This document shows positions 27,279-62,756 of a stretch of DNA of 64,000 nucleotides, piece by piece. The stretch is from the IMG/VR virus record IMGVR_UViG_3300037042_002125, positions 158,079-222,078 of that record; one strand, 5' to 3'. The notes beneath the pieces are model-generated. The model was not told the origin of the DNA and made no database searches. It saw only the letters and a list, made by a program, of their open reading frames with translations. Each line of letters begins with the position of its first letter. Positions within the stretch are counted from its first letter, which is position 1. A program made the position numbers and the translations under genes.

Positions 27279-27295
27279 TGTTATCCTTGTTTAGA

Positions 27296-28216: not shown

Positions 28217-28224
28217 GGTTCATC

Positions 28225-29025: not shown

Positions 29026-29027
29026 GG

Positions 29028-41192: not shown

Positions 41193-41212
41193 ATATTTCC
41201 TTGTTAACTAGT

Positions 41213-41220
41213 TATTTACA
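41213..41220 (-). promoter_or_regulatory. TGTAAATA motif
   Basis: Overlaps the DUF2264 stop, upstream of the dehydrogenase and recA. Confidence 0.5.
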
Positions 41221-49374: not shown

Positions 49375-49402
49375 AAATGACCTCGAAGGTAGTATAAGGG
49401 AG

Positions 49403-49420
49403 GGGGCAAATATTTGCCCC
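49403..49420. promoter_or_regulatory. perfect 18-bp palindrome in the polymerase 5' leader
   Basis: GGGGCAAATATTTGCCCC between TGTAAATA (49430-49437, -) and the RBS. Confidence 0.5.
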
Positions 49421-49432
49421 TTGTTTTGTTAT

Positions 49433-49654
49433 TTACAACGTAGATGATTGTTTACCCCAGGTGATTTTGTTCCACACACGCTCATGACACCAGTAGATGA
49501 AAGGCTTAACGACAATCTCAGTGGTGCCAATAGCAAGAGAAACAATAATCTTCCCAGTTACAACGTAGGAGATGATTACGGTTGTAGCTGTCCCACACAT
49601 GCGATAGCTATACGCCTTAACCAAACTCCTAATGCCAGATTCACCGTTACGCAA
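49433..49654 (-). CDS. DUF2061-family small membrane protein (start uncertain)
   Basis: RSLVKAYSYR..T....Y..TG....AIG..E...K..IYW.HERVW. Confidence 0.8.
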   Translation of the reverse strand: MRNGESGIRSLVKAYSYRMCGTATTVIISYVVTGKIIVSLAIGTTEIVVKPFIYWCHERVWNKITWGKQSSTL

Positions 49655-50498
49655 GTCCCATGTCTTGACGAATCTTTGTAGCAGAGATTGAGTGTGTTGC
49701 GTCATCGAAAGTTTCCTGGGCAATTGTATAACCAACACCGCGTCCGTACCCAATGTGGGTGATGTTCGGCACAACTTGAATCTCGTACTGACCTTGGTAG
49801 ATAGGGTCAAGGTCACGTCGTATGAAGGCCTTAACTTTCTCAATCTCGAATGGATTGGAACCATTCCAGCCTTGGCAATCACGCACTTGGATCACAACTT
49901 GACCCGTCTTCTGGATCAGACGGTCAAACAATGCACGGTGGCCTTCGTGCCAAGGTTGCCAGCGGCCAAGCATCTGCACAGTTTCCTTCTGCCAGTTGAA
50001 GACAGGACGACGGCGGTTGTTCAGTATATGGTCGCCAATGAACTCCGCCCACTTGTCAGCGTTCTGTTCAGGGACTCGGAAGTCGTATTGCTCAGGTGGC
50101 ACAAACGCTTTGTTGGTGTCCTCATACCGGCCTTGGTCGATTGTATCAACCCAGATCGTCCAGTCGGCTTTGAAGTTGTGGCGCATTTCAGGCAGAGGGG
50201 CTACAAAGTCAGCAATAGCAAAATCACCTGCTGACTTTAGGGCAAACTCCGCCATACGCAGTGATTGACGGATGCGCCCGTCATGCGAGAAGTCCCAATC
50301 ATTGAACCGCTTGCGAATCTCGTCGGCGTTGAACCAATCAACCTTTACACAGTACGGGCCAAGCATCGAGTCAGTTGTCATCGCTCTGGACAGCGACATG
50401 TTGTTGGCAGTGCCGTTGTCCTCAATGTATTTCTTAAGTGCCATTGCAAGTGTTGTCTTGCCGGAGCCTGGAAGCCCCATTACGAGTATTTTTGTCAT
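49647..50498 (-). CDS. adenylylsulfate kinase fused to HxGH nucleotidyltransferase
   Basis: GLPGSGKT, NADEIR, DFSHDGRIRQ, DFVAP, FVPP; then GRWQPWHEGH, NPF, SISATKIR. Confidence 0.85.
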   Translation of the reverse strand: MTKILVMGLPGSGKTTLAMALKKYIEDNGTANNMSLSRAMTTDSMLGPYCVKVDWFNADEIRKRFNDWDFSHDGRIRQSLRMAEFALKSAGDFAIADFVAPLPEMRHNFKADWTIWVDTIDQGRYEDTNKAFVPPEQYDFRVPEQNADKWAEFIGDHILNNRRRPVFNWQKETVQMLGRWQPWHEGHRALFDRLIQKTGQVVIQVRDCQGWNGSNPFEIEKVKAFIRRDLDPIYQGQYEIQVVPNITHIGYGRGVGYTIAQETFDDATHSISATKIRQDMGLA

Positions 50499-50516
50499 GT
50501 TGTTACCTTGTTAGTG

Positions 50517-51014
50517 TTAGAAACCAATGTTCTGGTTAATTTTTTTAGCGAATGCCCAATCGTAATGTAGCTCATACTGTAAAGGCTTTTCACGATTTGC
50601 CAAACGCCTAGCTAATTCTTGGGCATGGTACTCTGGGAATACGTTGTCCCATTTGGAAGTTATTCGGATATCAAACTTTGACGGAGGCACAAACAATTTG
50701 TTAGTATCCTCGAACCGACCAGCTTCAATACGGTCAACCCAAATTGTGAATTGGGCATTGAACAATGCTCGCGTTTCCTCGGTAGGACACACAAAGTCGG
50801 CAATGACGTTTGCGCCCCACTTGGCTGCAATGTCACACAGGTGTCCCATGCGTCGCGCTTGCTCAACACGATCAGAAGATGAAAAACCAAGGTCCTTGTT
50901 AATGTTTTTGCGTATATCGTCGGCGTTGAAGTGTACGCACTTTAGATTTTTAGCCAAGGCCTCAGCAAGATAAGTCTTGCCGGACCCTGGTAGTCCCATA
51001 ATTAGGATCTTCAT
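50517..51014 (-). CDS. cysC: adenylylsulfate (APS) kinase
   Basis: GLPGSGKT, NADDIRK..DLGFS..DRVEQARR, DFVCP, FVPP. Confidence 0.85.
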   Translation of the reverse strand: MKILIMGLPGSGKTYLAEALAKNLKCVHFNADDIRKNINKDLGFSSSDRVEQARRMGHLCDIAAKWGANVIADFVCPTEETRALFNAQFTIWVDRIEAGRFEDTNKLFVPPSKFDIRITSKWDNVFPEYHAQELARRLANREKPLQYELHYDWAFAKKINQNIGF

Positions 51015-51033
51015 ATTGTTGAACTAGTTGGAG

Positions 51034-51345
51034 TTACTCGGCTTCGAGCATTTCCTTGACGCGGGCGCGCAACGTGTCGTCAGTCCACGTGCCGCGCACG
51101 GCCAAGTACGCATCGCCTTCCCATGCGGTCATGTTGCGAGTAGTCAGTGGTGTAGTCGGGAACGAAACGACGACCTGAACGCTGCTCAGAGGACCGCGCC
51201 CAAAGTTCTCGCGATGCGGCTGATCTGGATTGGGGTTGGGAGGCGTGTAGCCGTAGTTTTCTTGAACGTCAACGAGATCAAATTCAGTGACGACGACGGC
51301 TGCAATTGCTGCGGCCACTACATAGCTTTTCGACAAGGCTGTCAT
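51034..51345 (-). CDS. hypothetical protein
   Basis: AAGGA RBS; Pro/Tyr-rich loop and C-terminal WEGDAY..GTWTD. Confidence 0.65.
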   Translation of the reverse strand: MTALSKSYVVAAAIAAVVVTEFDLVDVQENYGYTPPNPNPDQPHRENFGRGPLSSVQVVVSFPTTPLTTRNMTAWEGDAYLAVRGTWTDDTLRARVKEMLEAE

Positions 51346-51354
51346 GGTAAGTCC

Positions 51355-52272
51355 TTAAAGTTGAATGGCCGATTTTGGCCGTTGGGGTTGCGGGATAGAT
51401 TGCGGAGATTGTTTAACAAGTTGTGATTGGGTTGTTGGCTGGACATTGGGTACCCAGTTAAGTTGTGATTTGATTTGATCGAAATTACTCCTCCAAAAAG
51501 ATGCGGATTCATATTGCTGCCAAAGGTCTCCAGGCAGAATACTAACACGTTGCTTGAATTCAACCTTCTTACGAACCGTATGGAGACCTACAATTTTTGT
51601 CTGCTGATCAAACTCATCGTAAGAATCTTCCACGCTATTTAAGTCATGGTTGAACCAAGGCTCGCCTATGAAATTATAAATAGCTTTGAGCACACTTAGG
51701 GGTTCGCATACTAACGTATCGTACTCAATGTACAGAATGTTCTTACGCTCATTGCAGAACAAAGATTGCTTTACGTTAGCCAAAGGACCCGCAACATAAC
51801 CTGGGAAGTTAGGAATCTGTCCCATAAGCATATTGCTACGCTCGTACACGGTACTTAGTTGCTGATGACCGTACAGTGGCTTGATCGTGTATGGATTTTT
51901 AGCATTTAGTTGCTCGAATGAATCGAGAATCCAAGGTATTTCTCGGACGCACACAATCATCTTGAACGTAGGGAACAGATCAGCAAGCAAGGCCGTCTCT
52001 GCGGACCACCCTCGGTTGGTATTGAAACAAACGTCAGTCTTGTTTTCCTTGTAGTAACTATCAAACAGATCACGAATCATCTGCCTGCGTTTATCAATAG
52101 ATACTACAGCCTCCATCCCTGCTGCTGTACCTGTATCCTTGATGATGCTGTTGATGTACATAGCCAGCGGATCACTGATGCCAGTGGAGAACCTTGGGTT
52201 CTGCTTCAAGATCGCGCTGAGCAACGTAGTACCCGATCGAGGCAAGCCAGAAATAAAGTGATATGTCTTCAT
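51355..52272 (-). CDS. PAPS-dependent sulfotransferase, RaxST-like
   Basis: YHFISGLPRSGTTLL..IL.QNP, NTNRGW, IVCVR..WILDSFE, YDTL, GLH.VR, FW. Confidence 0.9.
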   Translation of the reverse strand: MKTYHFISGLPRSGTTLLSAILKQNPRFSTGISDPLAMYINSIIKDTGTAAGMEAVVSIDKRRQMIRDLFDSYYKENKTDVCFNTNRGWSAETALLADLFPTFKMIVCVREIPWILDSFEQLNAKNPYTIKPLYGHQQLSTVYERSNMLMGQIPNFPGYVAGPLANVKQSLFCNERKNILYIEYDTLVCEPLSVLKAIYNFIGEPWFNHDLNSVEDSYDEFDQQTKIVGLHTVRKKVEFKQRVSILPGDLWQQYESASFWRSNFDQIKSQLNWVPNVQPTTQSQLVKQSPQSIPQPQRPKSAIQL

Positions 52273-52358
52273 TTGAAAACTCCAGTGACTACGCCGATAA
52301 TGTAGCCAAGAATGAACGCTACCATCGGGTGCTGTATGACGGCGTGAAGTTTAGCCAT
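52269..52358 (-). CDS. 29-aa membrane peptide (not in ORF track)
   Basis: MAKLHAVIQHPMVAFILGYIIGVVTGVFK; overlaps both neighbours. Confidence 0.5.
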   Translation of the reverse strand: MAKLHAVIQHPMVAFILGYIIGVVTGVFK

Positions 52359-54063
52359 TAGACTTCACCTTAGTGATAAGCTTGCCAAGGTCAGGCATGT
52401 ATAGGTACTGTATCTCGCTATTGAACAGAGTGACCAGCGCATCATACGTGCTCTCGACCAGCGGTTGGCCGGCCAGATTGAAGCTGGTGTTGAACAGCAT
52501 AGGCATTCCGGTAATTGACTCAAAAGCTTTGATGAGTTTGTAGTACACAGGGTTCTGTTTTTCAGTAACAGTCTGGATGCGGCAGGTACCGTCAACGTGT
52601 GTCACTGCGGGAATAAGATCGGCCTTGTCTTCACGCACCTTCACAGCGTACATCATGAACGGAGACTCTTCGAGGCCGGCCATTTCAAACAGTTGGTCTG
52701 CGTACTCTGCCATAACCGAGCCTGCAAAGGGGCGGAACCACTCGCGGTGCTTGACCGAGTTGATAAACTCTTTACCATTAGGCGCGCGCGGATCAAACAA
52801 GATACTGCGATTGCCCAAAGCGCGTGGACCGCCTTCTGCTTGCCCTTGGAACAAGGCGACGATCTGTTGTTTGGACAATAGGTCTGCTACATCTTCTGCA
52901 GTTGCATCTTCTACCTTGATGTTGCCGTTCTTCTCAGCCACCTGAATGGCCTCGTAGTTAGGAGGGGCGCCAAGATACACTGACGTTAGAGGGCGCACCG
53001 TCAGTTCCTTGCTGTGCTGATACCACGCGTATTGTGCCAGGCCGATCGCCGTGCCGCCGTCATGCGCCATTGGATCAACGTAGAACTCAATGTTAGGGAA
53101 CGCCTTGACGTACTTGTAGTTGGCGACGCAGTTGAGCGCGAACCCACCAGATAGTACGATGTTGGTTTCACCAGTTGTGTCAATCGCCTTCTGGATCAAC
53201 CGCATCACCATTTCTTCGGCTTCATTTTGAACCGCGTAAGCAAGGTTCTTGTCTTGCTCACGAACCAGATTGAAATCGTTGTGCCACTCACGAGGCTCAG
53301 TGTAGCGTTTCAGATATGGGAACCTGTTCTCGTCGATGTGTGCGCCCGCTGGGTACGCAGGGATCAGCAGGTTTTTGTTTCCCTTGCCGTTGACGAAGAA
53401 GGGTGGGATGCTCGTGTCTGGTTTTCCGTACGGGGACAAGCCCATTGTCTTACCAGCTTCAATGAAGCCGAATCCCAGGTACTGGGAGACAGCTTCGTAT
53501 GCCTTGGTAATGGTGACAGAGCTATCAAACTCTTGGATGCCGTTGTCGTAGTAGGTGTTGGTGCCACCGTCGGAGTAGCGTTTGTAGACTGCATTGAACT
53601 CATGTGGGTAACTGCATTGGTAAATTGTCTCGGTCTCGTATCCGGCAACCTCTGGGCCGTTCTCGCTAACACGTTCACGGTGGACCGAACCAGAACCGTC
53701 AACGATGATTGCGGCGGCGGTCTCAAAGCCTGAACCGTAAAAGGCAGCCGCAGCGTGGCCAAGATGGTGTAAGTTCCCCATCACAGATACCTTGATATTC
53801 GGGTTAAATTTACGGGCCAATGCAGAGTACGCATTTTCCCCTGTCCACGGTAAAACAGCTAATTCCGGTGAGGTACCGCCTATAATTAGCTCGTCTACGG
53901 GGTGATTTATGAGGACCTGTAGCATAGCACGAAACGGGTTTCCGTCGTATTTCATGCGACTGACTCGTTCTTCTTCACCATAGAAGGCAAGAACACCGTC
54001 TACGACGAGGGCGGCGCTGCCGTTGTGGCCTGGATTGATTGCCAAAATTGAATACATGGTCAT
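52351..54063 (-). CDS. O-carbamoyltransferase (NodU/CmcH/TobZ family)
   Basis: GHNGSAA, EEERVSRMKYD, HHLGHA, VDGSG, GKTMGL, GGFALNC, DGGTAIG, GPRALGNRS, REWFRPFA, NTSFN. Confidence 0.95.
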   Translation of the reverse strand: MTMYSILAINPGHNGSAALVVDGVLAFYGEEERVSRMKYDGNPFRAMLQVLINHPVDELIIGGTSPELAVLPWTGENAYSALARKFNPNIKVSVMGNLHHLGHAAAAFYGSGFETAAAIIVDGSGSVHRERVSENGPEVAGYETETIYQCSYPHEFNAVYKRYSDGGTNTYYDNGIQEFDSSVTITKAYEAVSQYLGFGFIEAGKTMGLSPYGKPDTSIPPFFVNGKGNKNLLIPAYPAGAHIDENRFPYLKRYTEPREWHNDFNLVREQDKNLAYAVQNEAEEMVMRLIQKAIDTTGETNIVLSGGFALNCVANYKYVKAFPNIEFYVDPMAHDGGTAIGLAQYAWYQHSKELTVRPLTSVYLGAPPNYEAIQVAEKNGNIKVEDATAEDVADLLSKQQIVALFQGQAEGGPRALGNRSILFDPRAPNGKEFINSVKHREWFRPFAGSVMAEYADQLFEMAGLEESPFMMYAVKVREDKADLIPAVTHVDGTCRIQTVTEKQNPVYYKLIKAFESITGMPMLFNTSFNLAGQPLVESTYDALVTLFNSEIQYLYMPDLGKLITKVKSNG

Positions 54064-54989
54064 TTCACTTTCTTGTCGACGTCAGCACAGATGGATACGA
54101 AGATTTCGTTGAGGTCCTTCTCGGAGAACCGCATGGTTGACTCATTGAGCCTGTTGGACAACGCTACGTCAAGACCGGCCAGACGGATAGGGCTGTACTT
54201 CTTGACGGTCAGACGATCAATGATATTGAAGTAGTCCGGGTACGACGTATTGATCGGGAACGTAGAGCCAAAGATCACAGAGCCGGGTGTACCGACCGCA
54301 CGAGCAATGTGCTGGCCTACGCTGTCGCAACCAACGAAGTAGTCGGCTTCGGCAATCAACGCACCCCACTGGCGCAGATCGCAAGTGTACTTGGCGGCAA
54401 AGTTGTCGTCCTTGAGTTGGAAGTCAGGCTCGCCGAAGAACACCATGTTGTATCTTTGGGCTAATTTCTTCACCAGCGACAGGTAATCCTTTTGGCTCAA
54501 GCTGCGGGATTCTTCATCGATGATCGCAGTCTTGTCAATCTTGGCGCCTCGACCAAACGGTTGGAAGATCACGGTCCGTTGCTTCTTCTGGATGCCCTTG
54601 AGGTCGTTGAGTGTGCTGGTAGCCACAGCGCGTTCGGTGATGTTGAACACCATCTGCGGTACGCCCAGATCGCTGTGATCCTTGGTCAGATTGATTTCCC
54701 GGTCAAAGCCTTCGACCAGCGAAATCTCCTGACGGAAATATGCGGGGTTGCGATACGGCTCAGGTGTGATGATACGATCCGCGTTCTTCACCACGTTGTC
54801 AAACACGCCCTTGGTGTCCAGGTTATACGCACGATCCTGTAGCTCAGGAATGCCCCAGAACAGAAAGTCCCATGCACCAATGAGCACAGCCCAATCATCA
54901 TTAGGGTTGAGCCGTCCGTACTTGATGAGTGCGGGGATGGCCGCGATCACTCGGCCTGCGCCGCCGTCGATGAAAAATATAGTCTTCAC
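54060..54989 (-). CDS. GT-B glycosyltransferase, GT9 (heptosyltransferase)-like
   Basis: GGAGRVIAAIPAL, FQPFG, ADYFVGCDSVGQHIARAVGTP..IFGST. Confidence 0.75.
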   Translation of the reverse strand: MKTIFFIDGGAGRVIAAIPALIKYGRLNPNDDWAVLIGAWDFLFWGIPELQDRAYNLDTKGVFDNVVKNADRIITPEPYRNPAYFRQEISLVEGFDREINLTKDHSDLGVPQMVFNITERAVATSTLNDLKGIQKKQRTVIFQPFGRGAKIDKTAIIDEESRSLSQKDYLSLVKKLAQRYNMVFFGEPDFQLKDDNFAAKYTCDLRQWGALIAEADYFVGCDSVGQHIARAVGTPGSVIFGSTFPINTSYPDYFNIIDRLTVKKYSPIRLAGLDVALSNRLNESTMRFSEKDLNEIFVSICADVDKKVK

Positions 54990-55705
54990 AGTAGGAGTCT
55001 TTCTTCAGTGGTTGTTGCTATTTCGGAAGTAGTAGGCGCTAAGCCTGTTAGCGAAATGTTCAAGTGTCGCTCGAACAGGATGTCAGTCTGGAGCAACGTG
55101 CCTCGCTCATCGTACGAGGTGCCAAAGATGTCGATTGCTACGTATCCGATTGCCGCCATGTACGCGATGACTTCGGCAAACAGAGGTGCGTCCTTGTTGT
55201 ATTCTGCGATTGAGCACTCCAATAAAATGTACAGAGGCAGCTTATCAAGAATGAATCCGGATGCGCCCTTGAGTATCAGTAGCTCTGCGCCCTGTGCATC
55301 GATTTTGATTAGTCCGTTCGTTGACCACGAGCCGAAGAAGTTGTGCTTGCGGTGCAGGGCGTCCACCGTTGTCATGTGCTTCTTCAGGACTAGCGTAGAC
55401 ATCGGGTTGTAGTGGAACGTCTGCTCAAGGAAGATTGAGCTGCCCGTAGTGTTCTTGTCTTCGCCGAGCGTGTAGAAATTCACGTTGTCTTGCTCACGAT
55501 CACCAAGCAAGGCGATGATCGCTCGGTCAGATAACCACGGCGCCTGGCGTTCGTCAGCTTCGATCTGCCACACTATAGCAGTAGGCCACACGGCTCTGAC
55601 CGTTTCAGTGAACTCACCACGGTAGGCGCCAATGTCAAGCACGTAGTTGATGTGTCTTCCGTGGTTCTTCAACACCGAGAACCTCTGTCTGAATTGTTCA
55701 ATCAT
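54986..55705 (-). CDS. FkbM-family methyltransferase
   Basis: LDIGAYRG, IEA, TGSS, IKIDAQGAELLILKG, Q.DILF. Confidence 0.9.
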   Translation of the reverse strand: MIEQFRQRFSVLKNHGRHINYVLDIGAYRGEFTETVRAVWPTAIVWQIEADERQAPWLSDRAIIALLGDREQDNVNFYTLGEDKNTTGSSIFLEQTFHYNPMSTLVLKKHMTTVDALHRKHNFFGSWSTNGLIKIDAQGAELLILKGASGFILDKLPLYILLECSIAEYNKDAPLFAEVIAYMAAIGYVAIDIFGTSYDERGTLLQTDILFERHLNISLTGLAPTTSEIATTTEERLLL

Positions 55706-56502
55706 TTTCTGTTCCAAAAGTCGAGCTGCATATCAGTGTAGAGATTGGTCAGTTCGTGTCCGATCACTTTCTCGGGCTCAGGACTTGTCTGAGCCATCGT
55801 CGGGCGCACGTCATGCAGACCTTCGAGACCGCCGTGGTATGAGTCGTTCTCAGGCATTGGCTGTAGCGAATCCAGACGGACTCCGCAGGACTCAATGCCG
55901 ACGAACTGACAGACCTGGTCCATTGTTCCCTGACTGTTATTTACAATGTCCAAATAGCGTAGCACCAGCAGGTCAGCAGCACCTGATTGAAATCCATGAC
56001 GCAGCGCCATGTAGGGCACGTTGATGTAACGCTCCCACAAAATCTTGCATCTGTTCTTGTCGTTGATCGGCAGCCCCTTGTCGATCAGGTCTTGATCCAC
56101 GAACGTAGTCTTGTGAGAGTTCTTGCGTATCAGCAGAATGTAGGACGCCAGCACACTGGGTATGGATCGCACTGTGCAGATGATCTTGGGACGCTCGTGC
56201 AGAACGTCCTTCATCATGTGAGCCTGACGCGGCCAGATGCGGTTCTTGTCAACGATGATAGGCTTGGATACGTGCTCGTAAGCGCCGAACACCAAGCCTC
56301 GCATCATGTTGCTGTACTGGTTTGGGTCTGGATTGACTAACGCTGCCGAGATTTGGGGCCAGTTGTTGTTGAAGATCGTAATCATGTCCACCACTGGTGA
56401 CGTAGTGGAGGCATGAATCATCGGATGTTGATTCAGCAAGGACGCAAGTACCTGTGAGCCAGAGCGTGGAATGCCCGAGAGCATGATAAAAGACTTGTCC
56501 AT
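55702..56502 (-). CDS. second PAPS-dependent sulfotransferase, RaxST-like
   Basis: SGIPRSGSQVL..LLNQHP, DKNRIW, ICTVR..LAS, GLHDVR, DFW. Confidence 0.88.
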   Translation of the reverse strand: MDKSFIMLSGIPRSGSQVLASLLNQHPMIHASTTSPVVDMITIFNNNWPQISAALVNPDPNQYSNMMRGLVFGAYEHVSKPIIVDKNRIWPRQAHMMKDVLHERPKIICTVRSIPSVLASYILLIRKNSHKTTFVDQDLIDKGLPINDKNRCKILWERYINVPYMALRHGFQSGAADLLVLRYLDIVNNSQGTMDQVCQFVGIESCGVRLDSLQPMPENDSYHGGLEGLHDVRPTMAQTSPEPEKVIGHELTNLYTDMQLDFWNRK

Positions 56503-56987
56503 TACAGTTGTTTCCCGTTCGTTGGGGCCGCAGTTGCTGTAGTACCGCGCATAATCTCAAGGAACTCCTTTGTGCCTAGGAAGTTCCAGCCACCATCAAT
56601 CTCGTACCGCACATTGGCCAAGGCATTTCGTTGGATAGCTTGCACGGCCCAATTCAGTACACGAGCGTCAAGCCGTTGCCCCATTTCCTTTATGGTGACG
56701 AACGATACTCCAGTTCGGGTTGTTTCCAACACTAGCAACGCGTTGACCAGATTAGGCTTCATCCATGCAGGGATAGCGAGCGACCTCAACCATAGACAGC
56801 GGAACGTTTTGCACGGTTGCTCAGGTCGATCTTCATAGATGGTGCAGCCAGTTTCACACACGAAATGGCACTTCGTACCTGGATAGAACTGGTGTCCGTG
56901 CGCTTCGCCGGTCGCCCAACCATCGCAGCAGGCCGTACAGCCACCACAGTTCCTTTCAGCCATTATGTGAATTGTGGCACCTCTCAT
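56502..56987 (-). CDS. Cys-cluster protein (YkgJ/CxxCxxCC-like, Zn or Fe-S binding)
   Basis: CGGCTACC...CHFVC..GCTIYEDRP..CKTFRCLW. Confidence 0.75.
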   Translation of the reverse strand: MRGATIHIMAERNCGGCTACCDGWATGEAHGHQFYPGTKCHFVCETGCTIYEDRPEQPCKTFRCLWLRSLAIPAWMKPNLVNALLVLETTRTGVSFVTIKEMGQRLDARVLNWAVQAIQRNALANVRYEIDGGWNFLGTKEFLEIMRGTTATAAPTNGKQL

Positions 56988-57682
56988 AGCTGCCTCTTCG
57001 TAGTCGGTATGGTAAAGTCAGGACCCTTGAACCATCTGGTAAACTGATGACTAGTTCCTTTAAACTTGTAGGGTCCGATATGGTTGCACACGATGTCAGG
57101 ATCGAGATATATCTGGAAGCCGCCCGTACGTAGCTTGTTGAACGCGTGAATGTCCTCGCTTATGAGGCTACTGTCTTCGATCACAACGTCAAAGATCATG
57201 CGACGCTCTTTGTTGTCCTTGGGATCGATGTAGGGCACACTTGCGTCCCACAAATACTGCATGGCCTTGCGACTCATCTTGACGAAGCCTGTTCCTAGCC
57301 CATCAACTTCGATCAGACCAGTGACGGGGTCCTTGGGACGTCGCTGTACACTGCGAACAACGTACTCCTCAATGTCGCCCTTCTTGCGATACGTGCCACC
57401 AACCACGTCAGCCTCGTGGTCTAGCAGTCGGAAGAACCACTCAGGTTCCCACTCAATGTCGCTGTCAATCCAGATCAGATCGTCAACGCCCGACTCAAGA
57501 GCAACGTGGATTGTGTCGTTACGGGCACGTTGCAGCAGAGCGTCGAAGCTGATCCACATTGGCGTAATATCGACGTCACGTTCCATGCCCATCTTGATCG
57601 TATTGCACAGACTGTTCGTGTACCACACGTCGAGGCGGCCGTCGTAGCACGGCGTTCCTATCATCACTTTTCGTGCGCTCAT
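56984..57682 (-). CDS. GT-A fold glycosyltransferase
   Basis: IGTPCYDG, RARN, WIDSD, GGTY, GTGF, SED, H.G; ATGA-coupled start at 57682. Confidence 0.8.
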   Translation of the reverse strand: MSARKVMIGTPCYDGRLDVWYTNSLCNTIKMGMERDVDITPMWISFDALLQRARNDTIHVALESGVDDLIWIDSDIEWEPEWFFRLLDHEADVVGGTYRKKGDIEEYVVRSVQRRPKDPVTGLIEVDGLGTGFVKMSRKAMQYLWDASVPYIDPKDNKERRMIFDVVIEDSSLISEDIHAFNKLRTGGFQIYLDPDIVCNHIGPYKFKGTSHQFTRWFKGPDFTIPTTKRQL

Positions 57683-58323
57683 TGCAGTGCCTTTATCAAG
57701 TCTCGAAATTCTAGGAGGACAGTCTGTGCATCGGGCCCGAGATAGTTGTTCATGAACGAACGATATGGTACGGTGTCCGTCCACTCGTACACAATCTCCT
57801 CGTACTCGCGGTCGTGAAAAATGCTGTTGCCAACCAGGTGTTCTAGCATACTCAGTTTAGGCACCACAAGCATATTGCCGTCACGCTCAGTGAATATCCA
57901 GCGATGGTGAATGAAACCCAACCACTTGGCGCTCTCGATCCGCGTAAGTTCTGTGCGGATGCTGGGCGTGGTAATGACGCCGGCCTTGGCAATACGCGGC
58001 AGTAGCTCCAACGTAGTGAACGGGTTGTAGAGGTCTTCGAGAGTGTGAGTGCAGATCGCGTAGTCGAAGCGTCCGTGACGTTCCACATACTCAAGCATGG
58101 TGTTCCACGCCTCACGGTCGCAGACATCAATTCTCACGCCACTAGGTGACGTCACTGCATTGATGTCAATCACGAGGTCAGTGATAGACGCAGACCAGCC
58201 TCCGCCATGAGTACCGCCGACGTCAATGACAGAGTATCCCGGCGTCTGTTGTTTGGTGTTCCCTACGTCGTGTAGGATACGCGCACGGGTATGCAGCGTC
58301 CTACCGTATTTGATTGTGAGCAT
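57679..58323 (-). CDS. SAM-methyltransferase-like protein
   Basis: VIDVGG, FDYAICTHTLEDL.NP, HHRW. Confidence 0.7.
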   Translation of the reverse strand: MLTIKYGRTLHTRARILHDVGNTKQQTPGYSVIDVGGTHGGGWSASITDLVIDINAVTSPSGVRIDVCDREAWNTMLEYVERHGRFDYAICTHTLEDLYNPFTTLELLPRIAKAGVITTPSIRTELTRIESAKWLGFIHHRWIFTERDGNMLVVPKLSMLEHLVGNSIFHDREYEEIVYEWTDTVPYRSFMNNYLGPDAQTVLLEFRDLIKALQ

Positions 58324-58325
58324 AT

Positions 58326-59270
58326 TCAAGCCTGCAGTAGTGAGTTGAAGAACTGACGCCACTCGCCAATGCGATGTTCCCAACTGTAGCGACTGTTGAA
58401 CCAGGCCGACTGTGCACGCCATTGTGAGTCGGGTAGCCACGTGTACTCGTCGATAGCGTCTGCAAGCACCTTGGCGTACCGCTCGACTAGTCCGCTGCGC
58501 TCACTATTGACATACGTGGCGTGAGGTCCGCACGTCTCAGGCAACGCACCAAGACCTGTAGTGACTATGTGGCAACCAGCAGCGCCAGCCTCAATCGCGG
58601 ACAAGCAGCTAGTCTCCTCGAACGTACTTGGGTACGCCAGAATGTGAGCCCGTTGCACCGCTACGCGAACGGCTTTGTTGGTGACGTATCCTCTGTAATT
58701 TACACCTGGAGCAGTCCGACATTTGGCAAGGACGTCCTTGTTTTTCTGACCTTCGCCACTAGCGTAACCCGCACCATAGATGATGTTGGATGAGTACACG
58801 TCAAGAACCACATTGCGGCCAGGCTTCACAATCTCGTATGCGTCAAGCAGAATGTCAAGACCCCGATCTGGCATGGAGGTATAGATGAGCCGAATCTGAC
58901 CGTCCGGCTTTGGCACGAACGGTATTGGGTCAATTGCGTTTCTGATTACGGTGTTTTGAACGTGCTCGATGTTGTACAGTTCACGGAATTGGGCAAGCTG
59001 CCATTCACTGACGTAAACAAAGGACGATACTTGGCTGACGAACTCAGCGTCGCGCATTCCATAGGTTGCGGGCTGGTCAGTCATCAAGTGCTGCCACACT
59101 ACGTTGAGCCTTTGGGACTCAAGTAGCTGTGGAGCGCAGATGCTAAGGATCAAGTTGACCCGGCTTAGAATAGCGGGCCAATTTGGTCCTAGGTACCGCA
59201 AGAGGGAGGTGTACAGAAGTTCTGATCCGCCTTTTGGCGTTATTGATATTGGTGTCATGGTCTGTACCAT
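58326..59270 (-). CDS. GT4-family glycosyltransferase (start uncertain: 59270 or 59258)
   Basis: GGSE, VSEWQ, IRNAI, YTSMPDRGL, YPSTFEETSCLSAIEA.AAG, GALPE. Confidence 0.9.
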   Translation of the reverse strand: MVQTMTPISITPKGGSELLYTSLLRYLGPNWPAILSRVNLILSICAPQLLESQRLNVVWQHLMTDQPATYGMRDAEFVSQVSSFVYVSEWQLAQFRELYNIEHVQNTVIRNAIDPIPFVPKPDGQIRLIYTSMPDRGLDILLDAYEIVKPGRNVVLDVYSSNIIYGAGYASGEGQKNKDVLAKCRTAPGVNYRGYVTNKAVRVAVQRAHILAYPSTFEETSCLSAIEAGAAGCHIVTTGLGALPETCGPHATYVNSERSGLVERYAKVLADAIDEYTWLPDSQWRAQSAWFNSRYSWEHRIGEWRQFFNSLLQA

Positions 59271-59282
59271 TGGTGGAGAACG

Positions 59283-59307
59283 AAAAAGGAGTGTACGCAC
59301 ACTCCTT
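59283..59307 (-). terminator. intrinsic terminator after the fibre gene
   Basis: AAGGAGTGT/ACACTCCTT stem plus T tract on the - strand. Confidence 0.7.
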
Positions 59308-59314
59308 ATTTACA
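59307..59314 (-). promoter_or_regulatory. TGTAAATA motif heading the modification island
   Basis: Abuts the terminator stem. Confidence 0.55.
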
Positions 59315-59333: not shown

Positions 59334-62300
59334 TCACGCTCCTTCTAGCACACGCACGCGTTCTGTGAGCGCCTCTACGCTGGTAGTCAAAGCGTCATTC
59401 TTTTCTGCCAGTTCCTGAATGGCTTTCACCATCACTGGCAAGAGCTTACCAGGTGCTGCTTCGTATCTTGATTCGTCCTCGTTGGAGATCACAAGTTCAA
59501 GCCAGTCACGGACCTGATGGTAATCCATCGCTTGCTTGAGTTCCTGGGCAATAAATCCAGCGTACCCCTGACCAACTTTTGATCCGTCACGCATATTCCA
59601 TGTGAATTTCACTGGACGGATTTGCCGAATGAAATCAAGACCTAGTGGAATGTCCTGAATGTCTTTCTTGTCACGGGCATCAGATAGTGCAGTGATACTG
59701 GTTACCTGAGCACGGATGGTTGCTATGCTTGCGTTACCAAGAGTAATAGTATTAGAGCAAGCCGCTGCTAATGCCTGTGAGTTAAATCCTATTAGGATAT
59801 TATTTGATCCCCCGTTAACGGTGTATCCGGAACAGCAACCAATAGCTATGTTATTGCTGCCGGTGGTGTTGCCGTAGAGCGCCAAGTACCCTTGGGCGGT
59901 GTTATTACTGCCGGTGGTGTTGGAGTAGAGCGCCTGTTGTCCCTGGGCGAAGTTATTACTGCCGGTGGTATTGTAGAAGAGCGCCTGTTGTCCCTGGGCG
60001 AAGTTATTATTGCCAGTAGTGTTGAATATGAGCGCCAAGTACCCCGAGGCGATGTTATTACTGCCGGTGTTGGAGTAGAGCGCCTGTTGTCCCTGGGCGA
60101 AGTTATTATTGCCGGTGGTGTTGGAGGTGAGCGCCAAGTACCCTTGGGCGAAGTTATTACAACCGGTGGTATTGGAGCTGAGCGCCAAGTACCCTTGGGC
60201 GAAGTTATTGTTGCCGGTGGTGTTGAAGTAGAGCGCCTGGTATCCTATTGCGGTGTTATTACTGCCGGTGGTGTTGCCGTAGAGCGCATGGTTTCCTTGG
60301 GCGAAGTTATTACTGCCGTAGGTGTTGCTGTAAAGTGCAGCTTGTCCCTGGGCGGTGTTATTACTGCCGGTGGTGTTGGAGGTGAGCGCCTGGTATCCTA
60401 TTGCGGTGTTATTACTGCCGGTGGTGTTGGAGTAGAGCGCCTGTTGTCCCTGGGCGAAGTTATTATTGCCGGTGGTGTTGTTGCTATAGAGTGCCTTGTA
60501 TCCCTGGGCGAAGTTATTACAACCGGTGGTGTTACCGTAGAGCGCCCAGTACCCTTGGGCGAAGTTATTACGGCCGGTGGTGTTGGAGGTGAGCGCCAAG
60601 TACCCTTGGGCGAAGTTATTACCGCCGGTGGTGTTGCAGTAGAGCGCCTGTTGTCCCTGGGCGAAGTTATTATTGCCGGTGGTGTTGCTGCTATAGAGTG
60701 CCTTGTATCCCTGGGCGAAGTTATTACTGCCGGTGGTGTTGCCGTAGAGCGCCAAGTATCCTATGGCGGTGTTATTATTACCGTAGGTATTTGAGTAGAG
60801 CGCCGAGTATCCTATGGCGGTGTTATTACGGCCGGTGGTGTTGCAGTAGAGCGCCCTGCATCCTTGGGCGGTGTTATCATTACCAGTAGTATTGCCGTAG
60901 AGCGCCCTGTATCCTATGGCGGTGTTATTACAACCGGTGGTATTGGAGCGGAGCGCCTGTGGTCCCTGGGCGAAGTTATTACTGCCGGTGGTGTTGCTGT
61001 AAAGTGCCCCGCATCCTTGGGCGGTGTTATGGCTGCCGGTGGTGTTACCGTAGAGTGCCTTGTATCCTTGGGCGAAGTTATTACTGCCGGTGGTGTTCTT
61101 GCGGAGCGCCAGTGGTCCTATGGCGGTGTTATTATTACCGGTGGTGTTGCATTGGAGCGCCTTGCATCCTTGGGCGGTGTTACTACAACCGGTGGTATTG
61201 TAGAAGAGCGCCTGGTATCCTTGGGCGAAGTTATTACAACCGGTGGTGTTACCGTAGAGCGCCTGATATCCTTGGGCGAAGTTATTGTTGCCGTAGGTGT
61301 TGAAGTAGAGCGCCTTACTTCCCTGGGCGGTGTTATTACAACCGGTGGTATTGGAGCGGAGCGCCGAGTATCCTTGGGCGAAGTTAGTACTGCCGGTGGT
61401 GTTGGAGCGGAGCGCCGAGTATCCTTGGGCGAAGTTATTACAGCCAGAGGTGTTGCCGTAGAGCGCCCTGCATCCTATGGCGGTGTTATGGTTGCCGGTG
61501 GTGCTGTAAAGTGCCCCGTATCCTTGGGCGAAGTTACCACAGCCGGTGGTGTTCTTACATAGAGCACCGATACCAACTGCAAAGTTATTAGCGCCCGTAG
61601 TATTACTAGCCAATGCGCCAGTCCCGATACCAAGGTTGTTGTAAGTCGGGGTTAGTGAGGCGCCGCCTACCGAAGCGCCATTGACTGTTAATGCTCCGGC
61701 ACCAGTTACCTGTAGGCAGTTAGTACCTGCTTTAAGGTAGATAGTGTTAACCAGACCGGCAGTCCCTACATAAGAGCCTATGATAGTGTTGTCAACACCT
61801 GTGGTTATGCTCTTACCAGCATCAGCACCAATAGCGATGTTGTTACCTGCATTGTTCGATGCGTATAGGGCACAGCAACCGATACCAATGTTGTTGGAAC
61901 CAGTAGTATTGCTGTATAGTGCCTTGTATCCTTGGGCGGTGTTATTATTACCGGTGGTGTTGCATTGGAGCGCCTTGCATCCTTGGGCGGTGTTATTACT
62001 GCCGGTGGTGTTGGAGAGGAGCGCCAAGTATCCTATTGCGGTGTTATTACAACCGGTGGTGTTACCGTAGAGCGCCCTGTATCCTTGGGCGAAGTTATTA
62101 CAGCCAGTAGTGTTGAATAAGAGCGCCTTGCATCCTATGGCGGTGTTATTACTGCCGGTGGTGTTACCGTAGAGCGCCTTGCATCCTTGGGCGGTGTTAT
62201 TATTGCCGGTGGTGTTCTTGTAGAGCGCCTTACTTCCCTGGGCGGTGTTATTATTGCCGGTGGTGTTGCCGTAGAGCGCCTTGCATCCTTGGGCGGTGTT

Positions 62301-62720: not shown

Positions 62721-62756
62721 CGTTCCTTTCAAGAACTCGGTTATTTAGATTGTCGA

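What the first reader, a model, noticed from the sequence alone, without database searches (positions are those of the whole stretch)
49433..59314. Candidate new system: phage sulfation-carbamoylation-glycosylation-methylation island beside a variable tail fibre
Seen: 14 tightly coupled - strand genes behind one TGTAAATA motif, visibly GC-richer than the core. In order: GT4, MTase-like, GT-A, Cys-cluster protein, sulfotransferase, FkbM MTase, GT9-like, carbamoyltransferase, TM peptide, sulfotransferase, small ORF, APS kinase, APS kinase-NTase and DUF2061. Established: this chemistry set parallels Nod-factor decoration (NodH/NodPQ/NodU) and Xanthomonas RaxST/RaxPQ peptide sulfation. Inference: the phage builds a sulfated, carbamoylated, methylated glyco-decoration with its own donor supply. 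The target is unresolved: adjacency suggests the fibre or virion, while promoter class and position before polA allow DNA or host surface.
Basis: partly seen in the sequence, partly recalled or inferred. Interest (0 to 1): 0.88.

Follow-up and report, generated by a model that had tools for sequence, protein, structure and literature searches.

The report
Phage tail-fibre glycan decoration gene cassette
A jumbo phage carries, directly behind a highly repetitive tail-fibre gene, a conserved set of sugar-adding, sulfating, carbamoylating and methylating enzymes. The set recurs beside tail-fibre genes in many unrelated phages and most likely coats the fibre itself with a decorated sugar.

Summary
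All 14 minus-strand ORFs exist, are tightly packed, and are richer in G+C than the phage backbone. Ten have family support: GT4, FkbM, GT9 fold, NodU-type carbamoyltransferase, two sulfotransferases, two APS-kinase-like paralogues and DUF2061 are clear, and the GT-A-like protein has a phage-family match only. The MTase-like call is weak, and the 29-aa membrane peptide is not conserved.

The cassette is not a one-off. The GT9-like and carbamoyltransferase genes are adjacent in 36 of 37 lineages. In cyanophages and in one phage contig binned into a bacterial genome assembly, the pair sits between tail-fibre genes and a full ADP-heptose pathway. GT4 plus GT-A occur only directly behind a fibre made of about 47 seventeen-residue repeats. 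Two 32-kb pelagiphages pair the same fibre family with a lone distant GT9-like gene. The kinase paralogues occur only where sulfotransferases do.

Best reading (about 0.45): cytoplasmic glycosylation of the fibre with carbamoyl-heptose, extended, methylated and sulfated. Main rival (about 0.3): remodelling of the host receptor glycan. DNA is unlikely as a target, because a separate 7-deazaguanine pathway lies elsewhere in the window. TGTAAATA is enriched, but at both island borders a hairpin follows it, so its role as a promoter is unproven. I rate this a new variant of virus-encoded glycosylation.

The parts
59334..62732 (-). Tail fibre, 1132 aa: two blocks with about 47 copies in all of a 17-residue repeat (N-T-T-G-x-N-N-T/F-A-Q/I-G-x-x-A-L-x-x) and a C-terminal Peptidase_S74 chaperone domain. 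Proposed acceptor of the glycan.
   Evidence: Translation. Period 17 with 47 NTTG-type anchors and 63 NxS/T sites. DNA tandem repeat of period 51. Peptidase_S74 at 1e-11. No PDB or Pfam match for the repeat.
59286..59314 (-). TGTAAATA motif (59314-59307) directly followed by a 9-bp-stem hairpin and a T-run (59307-59286). Upstream border of the island.
58326..59258 (-). GT4-family glycosyltransferase, about 310 aa. The start is inferred from relatives.
   Evidence: Glyco_trans_1_4 at 5e-10. phrog_2170 at 1.5e-29. Found only behind the 17-mer fibre.
57679..58323 (-). Possible class I methyltransferase, about 214 aa. Accessory gene.
   Evidence: Methyltransf_23 at E 0.002-0.004, below threshold. 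Present in only some lineages.
56984..57682 (-). GT-A-like glycosyltransferase, about 232 aa, with a DSD motif. Always paired with GT4.
   Evidence: phrog_1574 at 1e-20 and phrog_34859 'glycosyltransferase' at 4e-5. Sub-threshold GT2/Anp1 hits. Co-occurrence with GT4.
56502..56987 (-). Cysteine-cluster protein, 161 aa, with a CxxCxxCC-type motif near the N-terminus. Function unknown; accessory.
   Evidence: phrog_9155 at 6e-35. No Pfam hit. Present in L014, L058 and L064.
55702..56502 (-). Sulfotransferase 1, 266 aa, with a PRSGS PAPS-binding loop.
   Evidence: Sulfotransfer_3 at 1e-11. R112 and S120 are invariant. Closest solved relatives are TPST1/2.
54986..55717 (-). FkbM-family methyltransferase. 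The slot is filled by a GT2/Methyltransf_24 protein in other lineages.
   Evidence: Methyltransf_21 at 1e-10. Replacement in L017, L006, L029 and others.
54060..54989 (-). GT9-fold glycosyltransferase, 309 aa: the invariant core gene and a putative heptosyltransferase.
   Evidence: Glyco_transf_9 at 2e-6. phrog_8954 at 2e-78. Model pLDDT 91. Foldseek top hits are WaaF, 3TOV, WaaC and TibC.
52351..54063 (-). NodU/NolO-type O-carbamoyltransferase, 570 aa. Always follows the GT9-like gene.
   Evidence: Carbam_trans_C at 5e-61 and Carbam_trans_N at 4e-22. Adjacent in 36 of 37 lineages.
52269..52358 (-). 29-aa hydrophobic ORF in the 78-nt spacer. Probably not a gene.
   Evidence: In relatives the carbamoyltransferase and ST2 are less than 30 nt apart.
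51355..52272 (-). Sulfotransferase 2, 305 aa, with a PRSGT loop. About 22% identical to ST1.
   Evidence: Sulfotransfer_3 at 6e-14. phrog_27463..
51034..51345 (-). 103-aa protein with a hydrophobic N-terminus. Function unknown; conserved in some lineages.
50517..51014 (-). APS-kinase-like P-loop kinase, 165 aa, with a shortened C-terminal half.
   Evidence: APS_kinase at 3e-15 over residues 3-84. The PDB hits at E up to 1e-4 (18 of 24 listed) are all APS kinases, with E about 1e-9 for the best. 41% identical to the N-half of the next gene.
49647..50498 (-). Fusion of an APS-kinase-like domain and a small HxGH/ISxTxxR nucleotidyltransferase-like domain, 283 aa.
   Evidence: More than 8000 metagenomic relatives. 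Occurs only with sulfotransferases in the loci examined.
49433..49705 (-). DUF2061 small membrane protein, about 90 aa. Overlaps the 3' end of the fusion gene.
   Evidence: DUF2061 at 2e-16. Also lies near the kinase gene in L006, L007, L014 and L070.
49401..49437 (-). Second TGTAAATA (49437-49430) plus a palindromic hairpin (49422-49401). Downstream border of the island, before polA.

Best explanation
The island is a phage-specific cassette for assembling and tailoring a glycan, and it belongs to the tail-fibre module.

Proposed mechanism (inferred, not shown):
1. In the infected cell's cytoplasm the GT9-fold enzyme transfers a heptose from ADP-heptose.
2. The adjacent NodU-type enzyme O-carbamoylates that heptose, as WapO does on the Pseudomonas LPS core.
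3. GT4 and the GT-A-like enzyme start or extend the glycan on the 17-residue repeats of the neighbouring fibre.
4. FkbM, and perhaps the second methyltransferase-like protein, O-methylate it.
5. The two sulfotransferases sulfate it. They use PAPS that the two APS-kinase paralogues make from host APS.

The product would be a fibre shaft carrying a regular array of charged, capped sugars. Such a coat could alter receptor binding, resistance to proteases or depolymerases, or sticking to non-host surfaces.

Shown: the enzyme families, the conserved gene order, the co-occurrence patterns and the restriction of the GT9 clade to phages.
Inferred: the donor sugars, the order of the reactions, and above all the acceptor.
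For: 1. The enzyme families are confirmed.
2. The GT9-like and carbamoyltransferase genes are adjacent in 36 of 37 lineages. In S-SSM7, P-SSM2, S-CAM3 and L075 the pair lies between tail-fibre or fibre-chaperone genes and a complete ADP-heptose pathway. Heptose 7-O-carbamoylation by WapO is a precedent (PMC8005017).
3. GT4 and GT-A occur in 11 of 13 informative lineages directly behind the 17-mer fibre, and the fibre never occurs there without them in these loci (Fisher p 2e-6, not corrected for phylogeny). In the reverse search, 8 of 9 fibre loci carry the island.
4. In most relatives the gap between the fibre gene and GT4 is 40 nt or less, or the genes overlap. That implies co-transcription with a late structural gene.
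5. Pelagiphages HTVC111P and HTVC112P (about 32 kb) pair a fibre of the same family with a single overlapping gene. That gene is a distant homologue of the GT9-like enzyme (hhalign probability 82%, E 1e-5, end to end).
6. In Vibrio phage K479 the GT9-like gene sits between two giant tail proteins.
7. The GT9 clade is almost absent from 185,579 species genomes. There were 7 hits, and the five that match over the full length each have the carbamoyltransferase next door. One of them (L075) was shown by Pfam to be a phage contig.
8. The fibre and the genes from GT4 through the carbamoyltransferase share raised GC3, distinct from the backbone.
9. The island has no priming phosphoglycosyltransferase, flippase, polymerase or Gtr-type membrane enzyme. 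A route that acts directly on a protein therefore needs nothing more.
10. The kinase paralogues occur only where sulfotransferases do: 11 and 5 lineages with sulfotransferases against 0 and 12 without (p 2.5e-4). The same holds in the unrelated contexts L067 and L070.
11. TibC/Aah heptosylation of beta-helical autotransporter repeats (own knowledge; TibC is among the fold hits) and mycobacteriophage virion glycosylation (cited in PMC12619734) show that such chemistry on structural proteins exists.
Against: - No direct evidence identifies the acceptor.
- Synteny with the fibre is equally predicted if the enzymes modify the fibre's receptor on the host. P22-type gtr and oac genes lie next to tailspike genes (own knowledge).
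- Some lineages have GT4 and GT-A behind a different receptor-binding protein (L015-L018, L036) or with no fibre within 10 kb (L044).
- The fibre family also occurs without any GT9-like gene: SPO1-type Bacillus phages appear in the fibre hit list but not in the GT9 hit list. It also occurs with no annotated glycosyltransferase beside it, as in Roseobacter phage CRP-1. L065 lacks the island too.
- The fold search cannot separate an LPS heptosyltransferase from a protein heptosyltransferase, and the TibC iron-finger region is absent.
- In this window a terminator-like hairpin separates the fibre gene from GT4, and the TGTAAATA motif also precedes replication genes.
- The invariant N, T and G of the repeat may be purely structural.
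- Three small membrane proteins in the island hint at a step at the cell envelope.
- The kinase paralogues lack the APS-kinase DGD motif and the lid region. One relative (L066) has no sulfotransferase within 10 kb.
Confidence: 0.45

Rival explanations
1. Host-envelope remodelling. The cassette alters the host surface glycan that the adjacent fibre recognises, such as LPS core or O-antigen, capsule or EPS. Infected cells and debris then stop adsorbing competing phages or the phage's own progeny.
For: - GT9 enzymes and WapO-type carbamoyltransferases are classic LPS inner-core enzymes (PMC8005017).
- Cyanophage relatives were annotated as LPS genes (PMC3037559).
- Adjacency and co-variation with receptor-binding genes are also expected under this model.
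- The cassette sits next to different receptor-binding protein types.
- Small membrane proteins are present: DUF2061, the 103-aa protein and the 29-aa ORF.
- Surface-polysaccharide sulfotransferases are typical of host hypervariable regions used as phage receptors (bioRxiv 10.64898/2026.04.03.716430).
Against: - No priming transferase, flippase, ligase or Gtr/Oac-type membrane enzyme is present.
- The GT9 clade is essentially confined to phages rather than being drawn repeatedly from hosts.
- The same gene pair occurs in phages of very different hosts, whose envelopes differ: cyanobacteria, SAR11, vibrios and unknown freshwater hosts.
- Tight operon coupling to a late fibre gene in most lineages gives little time to rebuild an outer membrane.
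- Cyanophages bring a whole ADP-heptose pathway. From memory, marine Synechococcus LPS lacks heptose, which would leave no native core acceptor.
Confidence: 0.3
2. A soluble or lipid-linked small glycoconjugate, such as a Nod-factor-like or sulfated glycolipid or a secondary metabolite. It would be made during infection to manipulate the host or its neighbours.
For: - The chemistry parallels the Nod-factor tailoring enzymes NodU/NolO, NodH/NoeE and NodPQ: NCBIfam gives weak NoeE hits and cyanophage homologues are annotated 'Nol-like'.
- Iyer et al. proposed metabolite roles for cyanophage tailoring-enzyme clusters (PMC2938197).
Against: - No backbone synthase (NodC-like, NRPS or PKS) and no exporter is present.
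- A metabolite model does not explain the strict linkage to tail-fibre genes across five phage groups.
Confidence: 0.06
3. DNA hypermodification. The transferases decorate a modified base in the phage DNA, given the position just upstream of polA.
For: - Phage glycosyltransferases and P-loop kinases are used in DNA hypermodification (own knowledge; Pyle et al. 2024 is cited in PMC12619734).
- In this genome the island abuts polA and shares the TGTAAATA motif with replication genes.
Against: - No hydroxymethylase, TET/JBP enzyme or base-exchange enzyme lies in or next to the island.
- polA adjacency is unique to this genome. Relatives have RNR or other genes downstream.
- The phage has a separate 7-deazaguanine pathway (FolE, QueE, MazG-like, QueD) at 26586-29570.
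- The conserved partner is the fibre gene, not a replication gene.
Confidence: 0.03

Closest known systems
Bacterial autotransporter heptosyltransferases (TibC, Aah) acting on TibA and AIDA-I
   Same: - A GT9-type fold (TibC is among the top fold hits).
- The enzyme gene lies next to the gene for a long, repetitive, beta-solenoid-like surface fibre.
- The reaction is cytoplasmic and needs no lipid carrier.
- ADP-heptose is the likely donor, judging from ADP-heptose pathway genes next to the phage homologues.
   Different: - The phage protein is shorter (309 aa). It lacks the C-terminal region that carries TibC's iron-finger cysteines, and is as close to WaaF and WaaC as to TibC.
- The acceptor is unproven.
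- The phage system adds a carbamoyltransferase, further glycosyltransferases, methyltransferases and sulfotransferases.
Cyanophage 'LPS gene clusters' (P-SSM2, S-SSM7, S-SM2, S-CAM3; Sullivan et al. 2010, PMC3037559)
   Same: Homologous GT9-like and carbamoyltransferase pair (35-46% identity) in the same position beside tail-fibre genes. Function unknown in both cases.
   Different: - The cyanophage clusters carry ADP-heptose synthesis genes. They lack GT4, GT-A, sulfotransferase and kinase genes next to the pair.
- The window's cassette lacks heptose synthesis genes and adds sulfation and methylation modules.
- The phage backbone is different: a jumbo phage with a phiRSL1/BcepSauron-like polA.
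Mycobacteriophage virion glycosylation (Freeman et al. 2023, cited in PMC12619734) and chlorovirus or giant-virus capsid glycosylation
   Same: Virus-encoded soluble glycosyltransferases, and methyltransferases in chloroviruses, that would decorate the virus's own structural proteins in the cytoplasm.
   Different: - The enzymes are of different families, and homology to them was not tested here.
- The known targets are the capsid and tail tube, not a fibre.
- No sulfation or carbamoylation is known there.
- The modification is only inferred here.
Nod-factor tailoring (NodU/NolO, NodH/NoeE, NodPQ, NoeI) and Pseudomonas LPS-core WapO
   Same: The same reaction types: O-carbamoylation, PAPS-dependent sulfation with a dedicated PAPS supply, and FkbM-type O-methylation of sugars. 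WapO carbamoylates a heptose added by a GT9 enzyme (PMC8005017).
   Different: - No chitin-oligomer synthase or lipid A-core context is present.
- The kinase paralogues are divergent and are not fused to CysN.
- This is an analogy of chemistry, not orthology. NCBIfam equivalog cut-offs are far from met.
Phage seroconversion modules (gtrABC, oac) next to tailspike genes
   Same: Glycan-modifying genes placed beside the receptor-binding gene.
   Different: Seroconversion enzymes are membrane-embedded and act on the periplasmic side in lysogens. This island encodes soluble cytoplasmic enzymes, has no Gtr or Oac family match, and sits in what looks like a lytic jumbo phage.

Membership tests
CAZy GT9 (heptosyltransferase) fold family | GT-B two-domain fold closest to WaaC, WaaF and TibC | tested here: met
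   The model has pLDDT 91.3 and pTM 0.90. The 30 best Foldseek PDB hits are all GT9 enzymes, with E 1e-10 to 1e-6. Pfam Glyco_transf_9 scores 27.5 bits against a cut-off of 22, but only over residues 204-248.
CAZy GT9 (heptosyltransferase) fold family | Use of ADP-heptose as donor | not testable with these tools
   Context only. PfkB kinase, HAD phosphatase, cytidylyltransferase-like, epimerase and GmhA genes flank the homologues in P-SSM2, S-SSM7, S-CAM3 and L075. None lies in this window's island.
CAZy GT9 (heptosyltransferase) fold family | NCBIfam equivalog scores for WaaC, WaaF or WaaQ | tested here: not met
   Best scores are 27 bits against a cut-off of 467 (RfaQ) and 25.9 against 170.2 (heptosyltransferase III).
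BAHT protein heptosyltransferases (TibC/Aah) | Extra C-terminal iron-finger cysteine motif and dodecamer-forming elements | tested here: not met
   The protein is 309 aa against 371-390 resolved residues in the TibC chains. No conserved cysteine cluster appears among the invariant columns.
BAHT protein heptosyltransferases (TibC/Aah) | Enzyme gene adjacent to a repetitive fibre-like substrate gene | tested here: met
   Fibre-module adjacency is seen in jumbo-phage contigs, Kyanoviridae, pelagiphages, Vibrio phage K479 and L075.
BAHT protein heptosyltransferases (TibC/Aah) | Heptosylation of Ser or Thr in the fibre repeats | not testable with these tools
   Needs mass spectrometry of the fibre.
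NodU/CmcH O-carbamoyltransferase family | Both Carbam_trans_N and Carbam_trans_C domains above the gathering score | tested here: met
   79.7 bits (cut-off 24) and 205.7 bits (cut-off 27). 44-52% identical to cyanophage 'Nol-like carbamoyltransferase'.
PAPS-dependent sulfotransferases | Family HMM above threshold, plus a 5'-PSB loop (PxxGS/T) and a 3'-PB motif (R...S) | tested here: met
   Sulfotransfer_3 scores 45.9 and 53.3 bits against a cut-off of 27. PRSGS and PRSGT loops are visible. R112 and S120 are invariant in the ST1 alignment.
Protein-tyrosine sulfotransferase (TPST/RaxST type) | Specific relationship to TPST rather than to carbohydrate sulfotransferases | tested here: inconclusive
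   TPST1/2 are the best solved relatives of the ST1 profile (E 1e-9 to 9e-6). NodH- and NoeE-type enzymes were not among the PDB matches, and the fibre repeats lack the acidic context that TPSTs prefer.
APS kinase (CysC) | P-loop plus the DLGFSxxDR segment and an FxxP substrate motif | tested here: met
   APS_kinase scores 56.9 bits against a cut-off of 21.1 for the 165-aa protein. The alignment to M. tuberculosis CysC shows the conserved stretch. The kinase half of the fusion is 41% identical to it.
APS kinase (CysC) | DGD motif, full-length match including the lid, and the NCBIfam equivalog cut-off | tested here: not met
   NAD replaces DGD. The matches cover only residues 3-88. TIGR00455 scores 53.9 bits against 138.7.
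ATP sulfurylase / PAPS synthase | An ATP-sulfurylase catalytic domain fused to the kinase | tested here: not met
   The C-terminal 119 aa give only a sub-threshold CTP_transf_like hit (E 0.0026) and weak NMNAT hits, with no ATP-sulfurylase match. The structure model was too poor to use (pLDDT 55).
FkbM methyltransferases | Methyltransf_21 above the gathering score | tested here: met
   42.3 bits against a cut-off of 22.7. TIGR01444 scores 31.8 against 37.7, just below.
Phage seroconversion (GtrABC/Oac) | Membrane-embedded GtrA flippase, GtrB, GtrC or an acyltransferase_3 protein | tested here: not met
   No such family was hit by any island protein.
T4-type late promoter | TATAAATA-like element upstream of late genes only | tested here: inconclusive
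   TGTAAATA is enriched, 11 sites against 2.3 expected. It precedes the DnaB, SSB and polA genes as well as the island, often contains the upstream gene's TAA stop, and in three of the eleven copies (22723, 49437, 59314) is followed by a hairpin.

The most novel reading that the evidence does not exclude
GT9-fold enzymes encoded beside tail-fibre genes form a phage-wide family of fibre glycosyltransferases, found in Kyanoviridae, pelagiphages, vibriophages and freshwater jumbo phages. In this lineage they are the core of a complete virus-encoded cytoplasmic protein-glycosylation pathway. That pathway would place carbamoyl-heptose-based, methylated and sulfated glycans on every 17-residue turn of the fibre, using PAPS made by phage APS-kinase paralogues. 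The result would be the first sulfated glycoprotein fibre of a bacterial virus.
Probability: 0.4. Interest if true: 0.85.

Novelty: new variant of a known kind. Interest (0 to 1): 0.68.

Why it matters
Tail fibres decide which hosts a phage can infect. If phages routinely coat their fibres with their own tailored sugars, host-range prediction from fibre sequence alone misses a layer of specificity. It would also mean that phage-encoded protein glycosylation, known so far from mycobacteriophage capsids and tail tubes, is widespread in aquatic phages.

The work gives a concrete, testable function to the cyanophage 'LPS genes', whose role has been open since 2005-2010. It also points to a very abundant metagenomic kinase family (more than 8000 relatives) as a likely viral PAPS supply. 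Under the rival reading, the cassette would be a new kind of receptor masking by lytic phages. Cultured carriers exist (S-SSM7, P-SSM2, S-CAM3, HTVC111P), so the question can be tested directly.

Tried and rejected
- Megablast of the island and of the replication module against 50,697 phage records found nothing. There is no close cultured relative.
- Sequence search of the fibre and of the GT9-like protein against PDB found nothing useful. Pfam finds no family for the 17-mer repeat, not even at E up to 10.
- The AlphaFold model of the kinase-nucleotidyltransferase fusion was poor (pLDDT 55), so no fold search was run on it.
- I tested whether the nucleotidyltransferase half matches the cyanophage heptose-1-phosphate adenylyltransferase. 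Only the HxGH motif aligns (probability 6%), so this was rejected.
- An NAD-salvage reading of the fusion (NR kinase plus NMNAT) was considered. It is judged less likely, because kinase-only forms occur and both forms track sulfotransferases, and the kinase half carries APS-kinase-specific motifs.
- Tyrosine sulfation of the Tyr-rich repeats: the lineage without sulfotransferases (L025, L028) has little Tyr, but so do two lineages with sulfotransferases (L007, L013). Inconclusive.
- The Cys-cluster protein as a YkgJ/FliB-type CxxCxxCC protein: the resemblance is from memory only, and Pfam gives no hit.
- DUF2061: the literature search gave nothing informative.
- Literature searches for phage-encoded heptosyltransferases or sulfated or glycosylated tail fibres found no description of this system.

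Full report
**Source and setting.** The window is the last 64 kb of a 222-kb IMG/VR contig, IMGVR_UViG_3300037042_002125. Nothing close to it is among 50,697 deposited phage genomes. Its 1087-aa family A DNA polymerase is 36-39% identical to those of jumbo phages of Burkholderia, Achromobacter and Ralstonia. The plus-strand half of the window encodes a sigma factor, helicases, terminase, portal, ligase and structural proteins. The minus-strand half encodes replication and recombination proteins, then the island, then a fibre and a glycine-rich protein.

**The observation.**
- Pfam, NCBIfam and PHROGs confirm a GT4 glycosyltransferase, two PAPS-type sulfotransferases, an FkbM methyltransferase, a NodU-type carbamoyltransferase, an APS-kinase-like protein, a fusion of an APS-kinase-like domain with a small HxGH nucleotidyltransferase-like domain, and DUF2061.
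- The GT9 assignment rested on a 45-residue Pfam match. A 24-sequence alignment gave a confident model (pLDDT 91). Its 30 best PDB matches are all GT9 enzymes: WaaF, a Veillonella GT9, WaaC and the protein heptosyltransferase TibC.
- The 'MTase-like' and 'GT-A' labels are weak.
- The 29-aa membrane ORF sits in a spacer that relatives lack.
- The genes overlap or nearly abut.
- GC is 0.51 in the island against 0.445 in the backbone. The raised GC3 (0.56-0.69) is shared by the fibre gene and by GT4 through the carbamoyltransferase. ST2, the small kinase and DUF2061 look like backbone.

**The TGTAAATA motif.**
- It is truly enriched: 11 sites against 2.3 expected.
- It often contains the TAA stop codon of the gene before it, and it also precedes the DnaB, SSB and polA genes.
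- At both island borders a hairpin follows it directly (59307-59286 with a T-run, and 49422-49401). The island is therefore a unit bracketed by hairpins.
- What looked like a Shine-Dalgarno sequence is hairpin stem. GT4 probably starts at 59258.
- Whether the motif is a promoter is not settled. The phage's own sigma factor is at 2430-3500.

**The fibre.** The 1132-aa protein upstream has a Peptidase_S74 chaperone domain at its C-terminus. Before that come two blocks totalling about 47 copies of a 17-residue unit, N-T-T-G-x-N-N-(T/F)-A-(Q/I)-G-x-x-A-L-x-x, with N, T, G, N, A, G and L invariant (41/41) and the second A nearly so (40/41), and 63 NxS/T sites. The repeat matches no Pfam family and no solved structure.

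**Relatives.**
- The GT9-like protein retrieved 52 IMG/VR loci. With other fetches, 73 loci fall into 37 lineages when clustered at 90% GT9 identity.
- The carbamoyltransferase gene follows the GT9-like gene in 36 of 37 lineages. The one exception is a contig that ends there.
- The full order fibre, GT4, (MT), GT-A, (Cys), ST1, (FkbM or a GT2/Methyltransf_24 protein), GT9, carbamoyltransferase, ST2, (small), kinase, DUF2061 recurs with gains and losses of the bracketed parts.
- GT4 and GT-A occur together, and the 17-mer fibre is immediately upstream in 11 of 13 informative lineages. None of the 16 informative lineages without GT4 has that fibre upstream (p 2e-6, uncorrected).
- Searching from the fibre instead, 8 of 9 other loci have the island directly downstream.
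- In most lineages the gap between the fibre gene and GT4 is 40 nt or less, or the genes overlap.
- No other locus has polA downstream. Some have ribonucleotide reductase. The position before polA is therefore incidental.

**Independent contexts for the core pair.**
- In the T4-like cyanophages S-SSM7, P-SSM2 and S-CAM3, the GT9-like and carbamoyltransferase genes lie between annotated tail-fibre genes. They are followed by heptose-7-phosphate kinase, heptose-1-phosphate adenylyltransferase, phosphoheptose isomerase and an epimerase.
- A phage contig binned into a Polynucleobacter genome assembly (L075) shows a tail-fibre chaperone, a 1257-aa protein, the pair, and then PfkB kinase, HAD phosphatase, cytidylyltransferase and epimerase genes.
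- Clustering the upstream neighbours of loci that carry only the pair gives families of long fibre proteins and fibre-chaperone-like proteins.
- Vibrio phage K479 has a GT9-like gene between two giant tail proteins.
- The 32-kb Pelagibacter phages HTVC111P and HTVC112P carry a fibre of the same 17-mer family (about 40% identity). Its stop codon overlaps the start of a 'putative glycosyl transferase' that is a distant, end-to-end homologue of the GT9-like family (hhalign probability 82%, E 1e-5).
- Among 185,579 species genomes, the GT9 clade was found only seven times. The five that match over the full length each have the carbamoyltransferase next door, and L075 among them is demonstrably a phage contig.

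**Chemistry.**
- A heptose added by a GT9 enzyme and then O-carbamoylated has a direct precedent in the Pseudomonas LPS core (WapO; PMC8005017).
- The sulfotransferases have the PAPS-binding loops. Their nearest solved relatives are protein-tyrosine sulfotransferases, but that comparison is biased by what has been solved.
- The 165-aa protein and the N-half of the 283-aa protein are paralogues (41% identity). The 165-aa protein's PDB hits at E up to 1e-4 are all APS kinases, matched over the P-loop-to-FxxP half, including the DLGFSxxDR segment. NAD replaces DGD, and the lid is shortened.
- In the loci examined, these kinases occur only where sulfotransferases occur: 11 and 5 lineages with sulfotransferases against 0 and 12 without (p 2.5e-4). 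The same holds in two unrelated contexts. One contig has the kinase with no sulfotransferase within 10 kb.
- Kinase-only forms exist, so the kinase is the part linked to sulfation. This fits hosts that reduce APS directly and make little PAPS (own knowledge).
- The role of the nucleotidyltransferase half is open: there is no ATP-sulfurylase match and the model was poor.
- The family is very abundant in metagenomes.

**Target.**
- *For the fibre:* linkage to fibre genes across five phage groups; operon coupling in most lineages; shared base composition; a GT9 clade confined to phages; the minimal fibre-plus-GT9 pair in pelagiphages; and no lipid-carrier priming, flipping or Gtr-type genes, so a direct protein route needs nothing else.
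- *Against the fibre:* synteny with a receptor-binding gene is also what a receptor-modifying module would show. Some lineages place the cassette behind other receptor-binding proteins. The fibre family exists without it. The fold does not distinguish LPS enzymes from protein enzymes. Small membrane proteins are present.
- *DNA* is unlikely. There is no base-activating enzyme nearby, and FolE, QueE, a MazG-like protein and QueD at 26586-29570 point to a separate 7-deazaguanine modification.
- I put fibre or virion glycosylation at about 0.45, host-glycan remodelling at about 0.3, and the other readings together at about 0.1. The remainder is left unassigned.
- The narrower claim, that this is a functional fibre-module cassette making a carbamoyl-heptose-containing, methylated and sulfated glycan, I put at about 0.75-0.8.

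**Novelty.**
- The cyanophage core was noted in 2010 as 'LPS genes' that might be functional or 'stuffer DNA' (PMC3037559).
- Iyer et al. predicted sulfation of tail-collar-like proteins in bacterial operons (PMC2938197).
- Virion glycosylation is proven only for mycobacteriophages (cited in PMC12619734).
- Six literature searches found no description of a phage GT9-like plus carbamoyltransferase fibre module, of its sulfation extension, or of the 17-mer fibre as a partner.
- I rate it a new variant of a known kind: virus-encoded glycosylation.

Noticed in passing
window 26586-29570 (-): GTP cyclohydrolase I (26586-27278), QueE-like radical SAM (27296-28216), MazG-like NTP pyrophosphatase (28225-29025) and QueD/PTPS (29028-29570) lie in a row. 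This is probably a 7-deazaguanine (preQ0-type) DNA-modification pathway. QueC and DpdA were not seen in the window.
   Followed up: partly
window 2430-3500 (+), plus the 11 TGTAAATA sites: A phage sigma-factor gene (phrog_17569) ends inside a TGTAAATA copy. The motif is enriched fivefold, and at five of the eleven sites (3496, 41220, 44681, 49437, and by coordinates 3498-3500 etc.) its TAA is the stop codon of the preceding gene; three of the eleven copies (22723, 49437, 59314) are followed by a hairpin. It could be a phage-specific promoter or a gene-junction signal.
   Followed up: partly
window 9831-13547 (+): The large terminase ORF is 1238 aa and matches its family in three separate stretches. 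A short 'recombinase' hit falls at residues 765-801. This suggests an intein or another insertion.
   Followed up: no
window 40293-42367 (-): A truncated UDP-glucose/GDP-mannose dehydrogenase-like gene and a DUF2264 gene sit inside the replication module, behind another TGTAAATA. They may be further sugar metabolism unconnected to the island by position.
   Followed up: no
L083 2324-2731 and L085 919-1305 (Pelagibacter phages HTVC111P and HTVC112P): A gene annotated as an RTX toxin-activating lysine-acyltransferase family protein lies directly before the large tail protein gene, two genes upstream of the fibre and GT9-like pair. This hints at acylation of tail proteins as a second modification.
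   Followed up: no
L067 1-8852: In another freshwater phage contig, the kinase-nucleotidyltransferase fusion lies with two sulfotransferases that are interleaved with RCC1-repeat (beta-propeller) proteins, methyltransferases, DUF6445 and a GT25 gene. This is a different sulfation cassette beside other putative fibre proteins.
   Followed up: partly
L017 8546-9937; also L006, L029, L036, L044: The FkbM slot between ST1 and the GT9-like gene is occupied by a 460-aa fusion of a GT2-like domain and a Methyltransf_24/TylF-like domain. In L029 there is also an NAD-dependent sugar epimerase/dehydratase. A different family thus takes over the methylation step.
   Followed up: partly
protein P0031: A 79%-identical relative of the kinase-nucleotidyltransferase fusion is listed with a longest contig of exactly 222,078 bases, the length of the window's own contig. 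It may be a paralogue in the part of the contig outside the window.
   Followed up: no
L075 (contig binned as Polynucleobacter sp.): This 25.7-kb contig is phage-like: tail-fibre chaperone, fibre, the GT9-like and carbamoyltransferase pair, and ADP-heptose genes. The window's backbone GC (0.445) is, from memory, close to that of Polynucleobacter, and its polA is closest to phages of Burkholderiales. That makes a freshwater betaproteobacterial host a reasonable guess.
   Followed up: no
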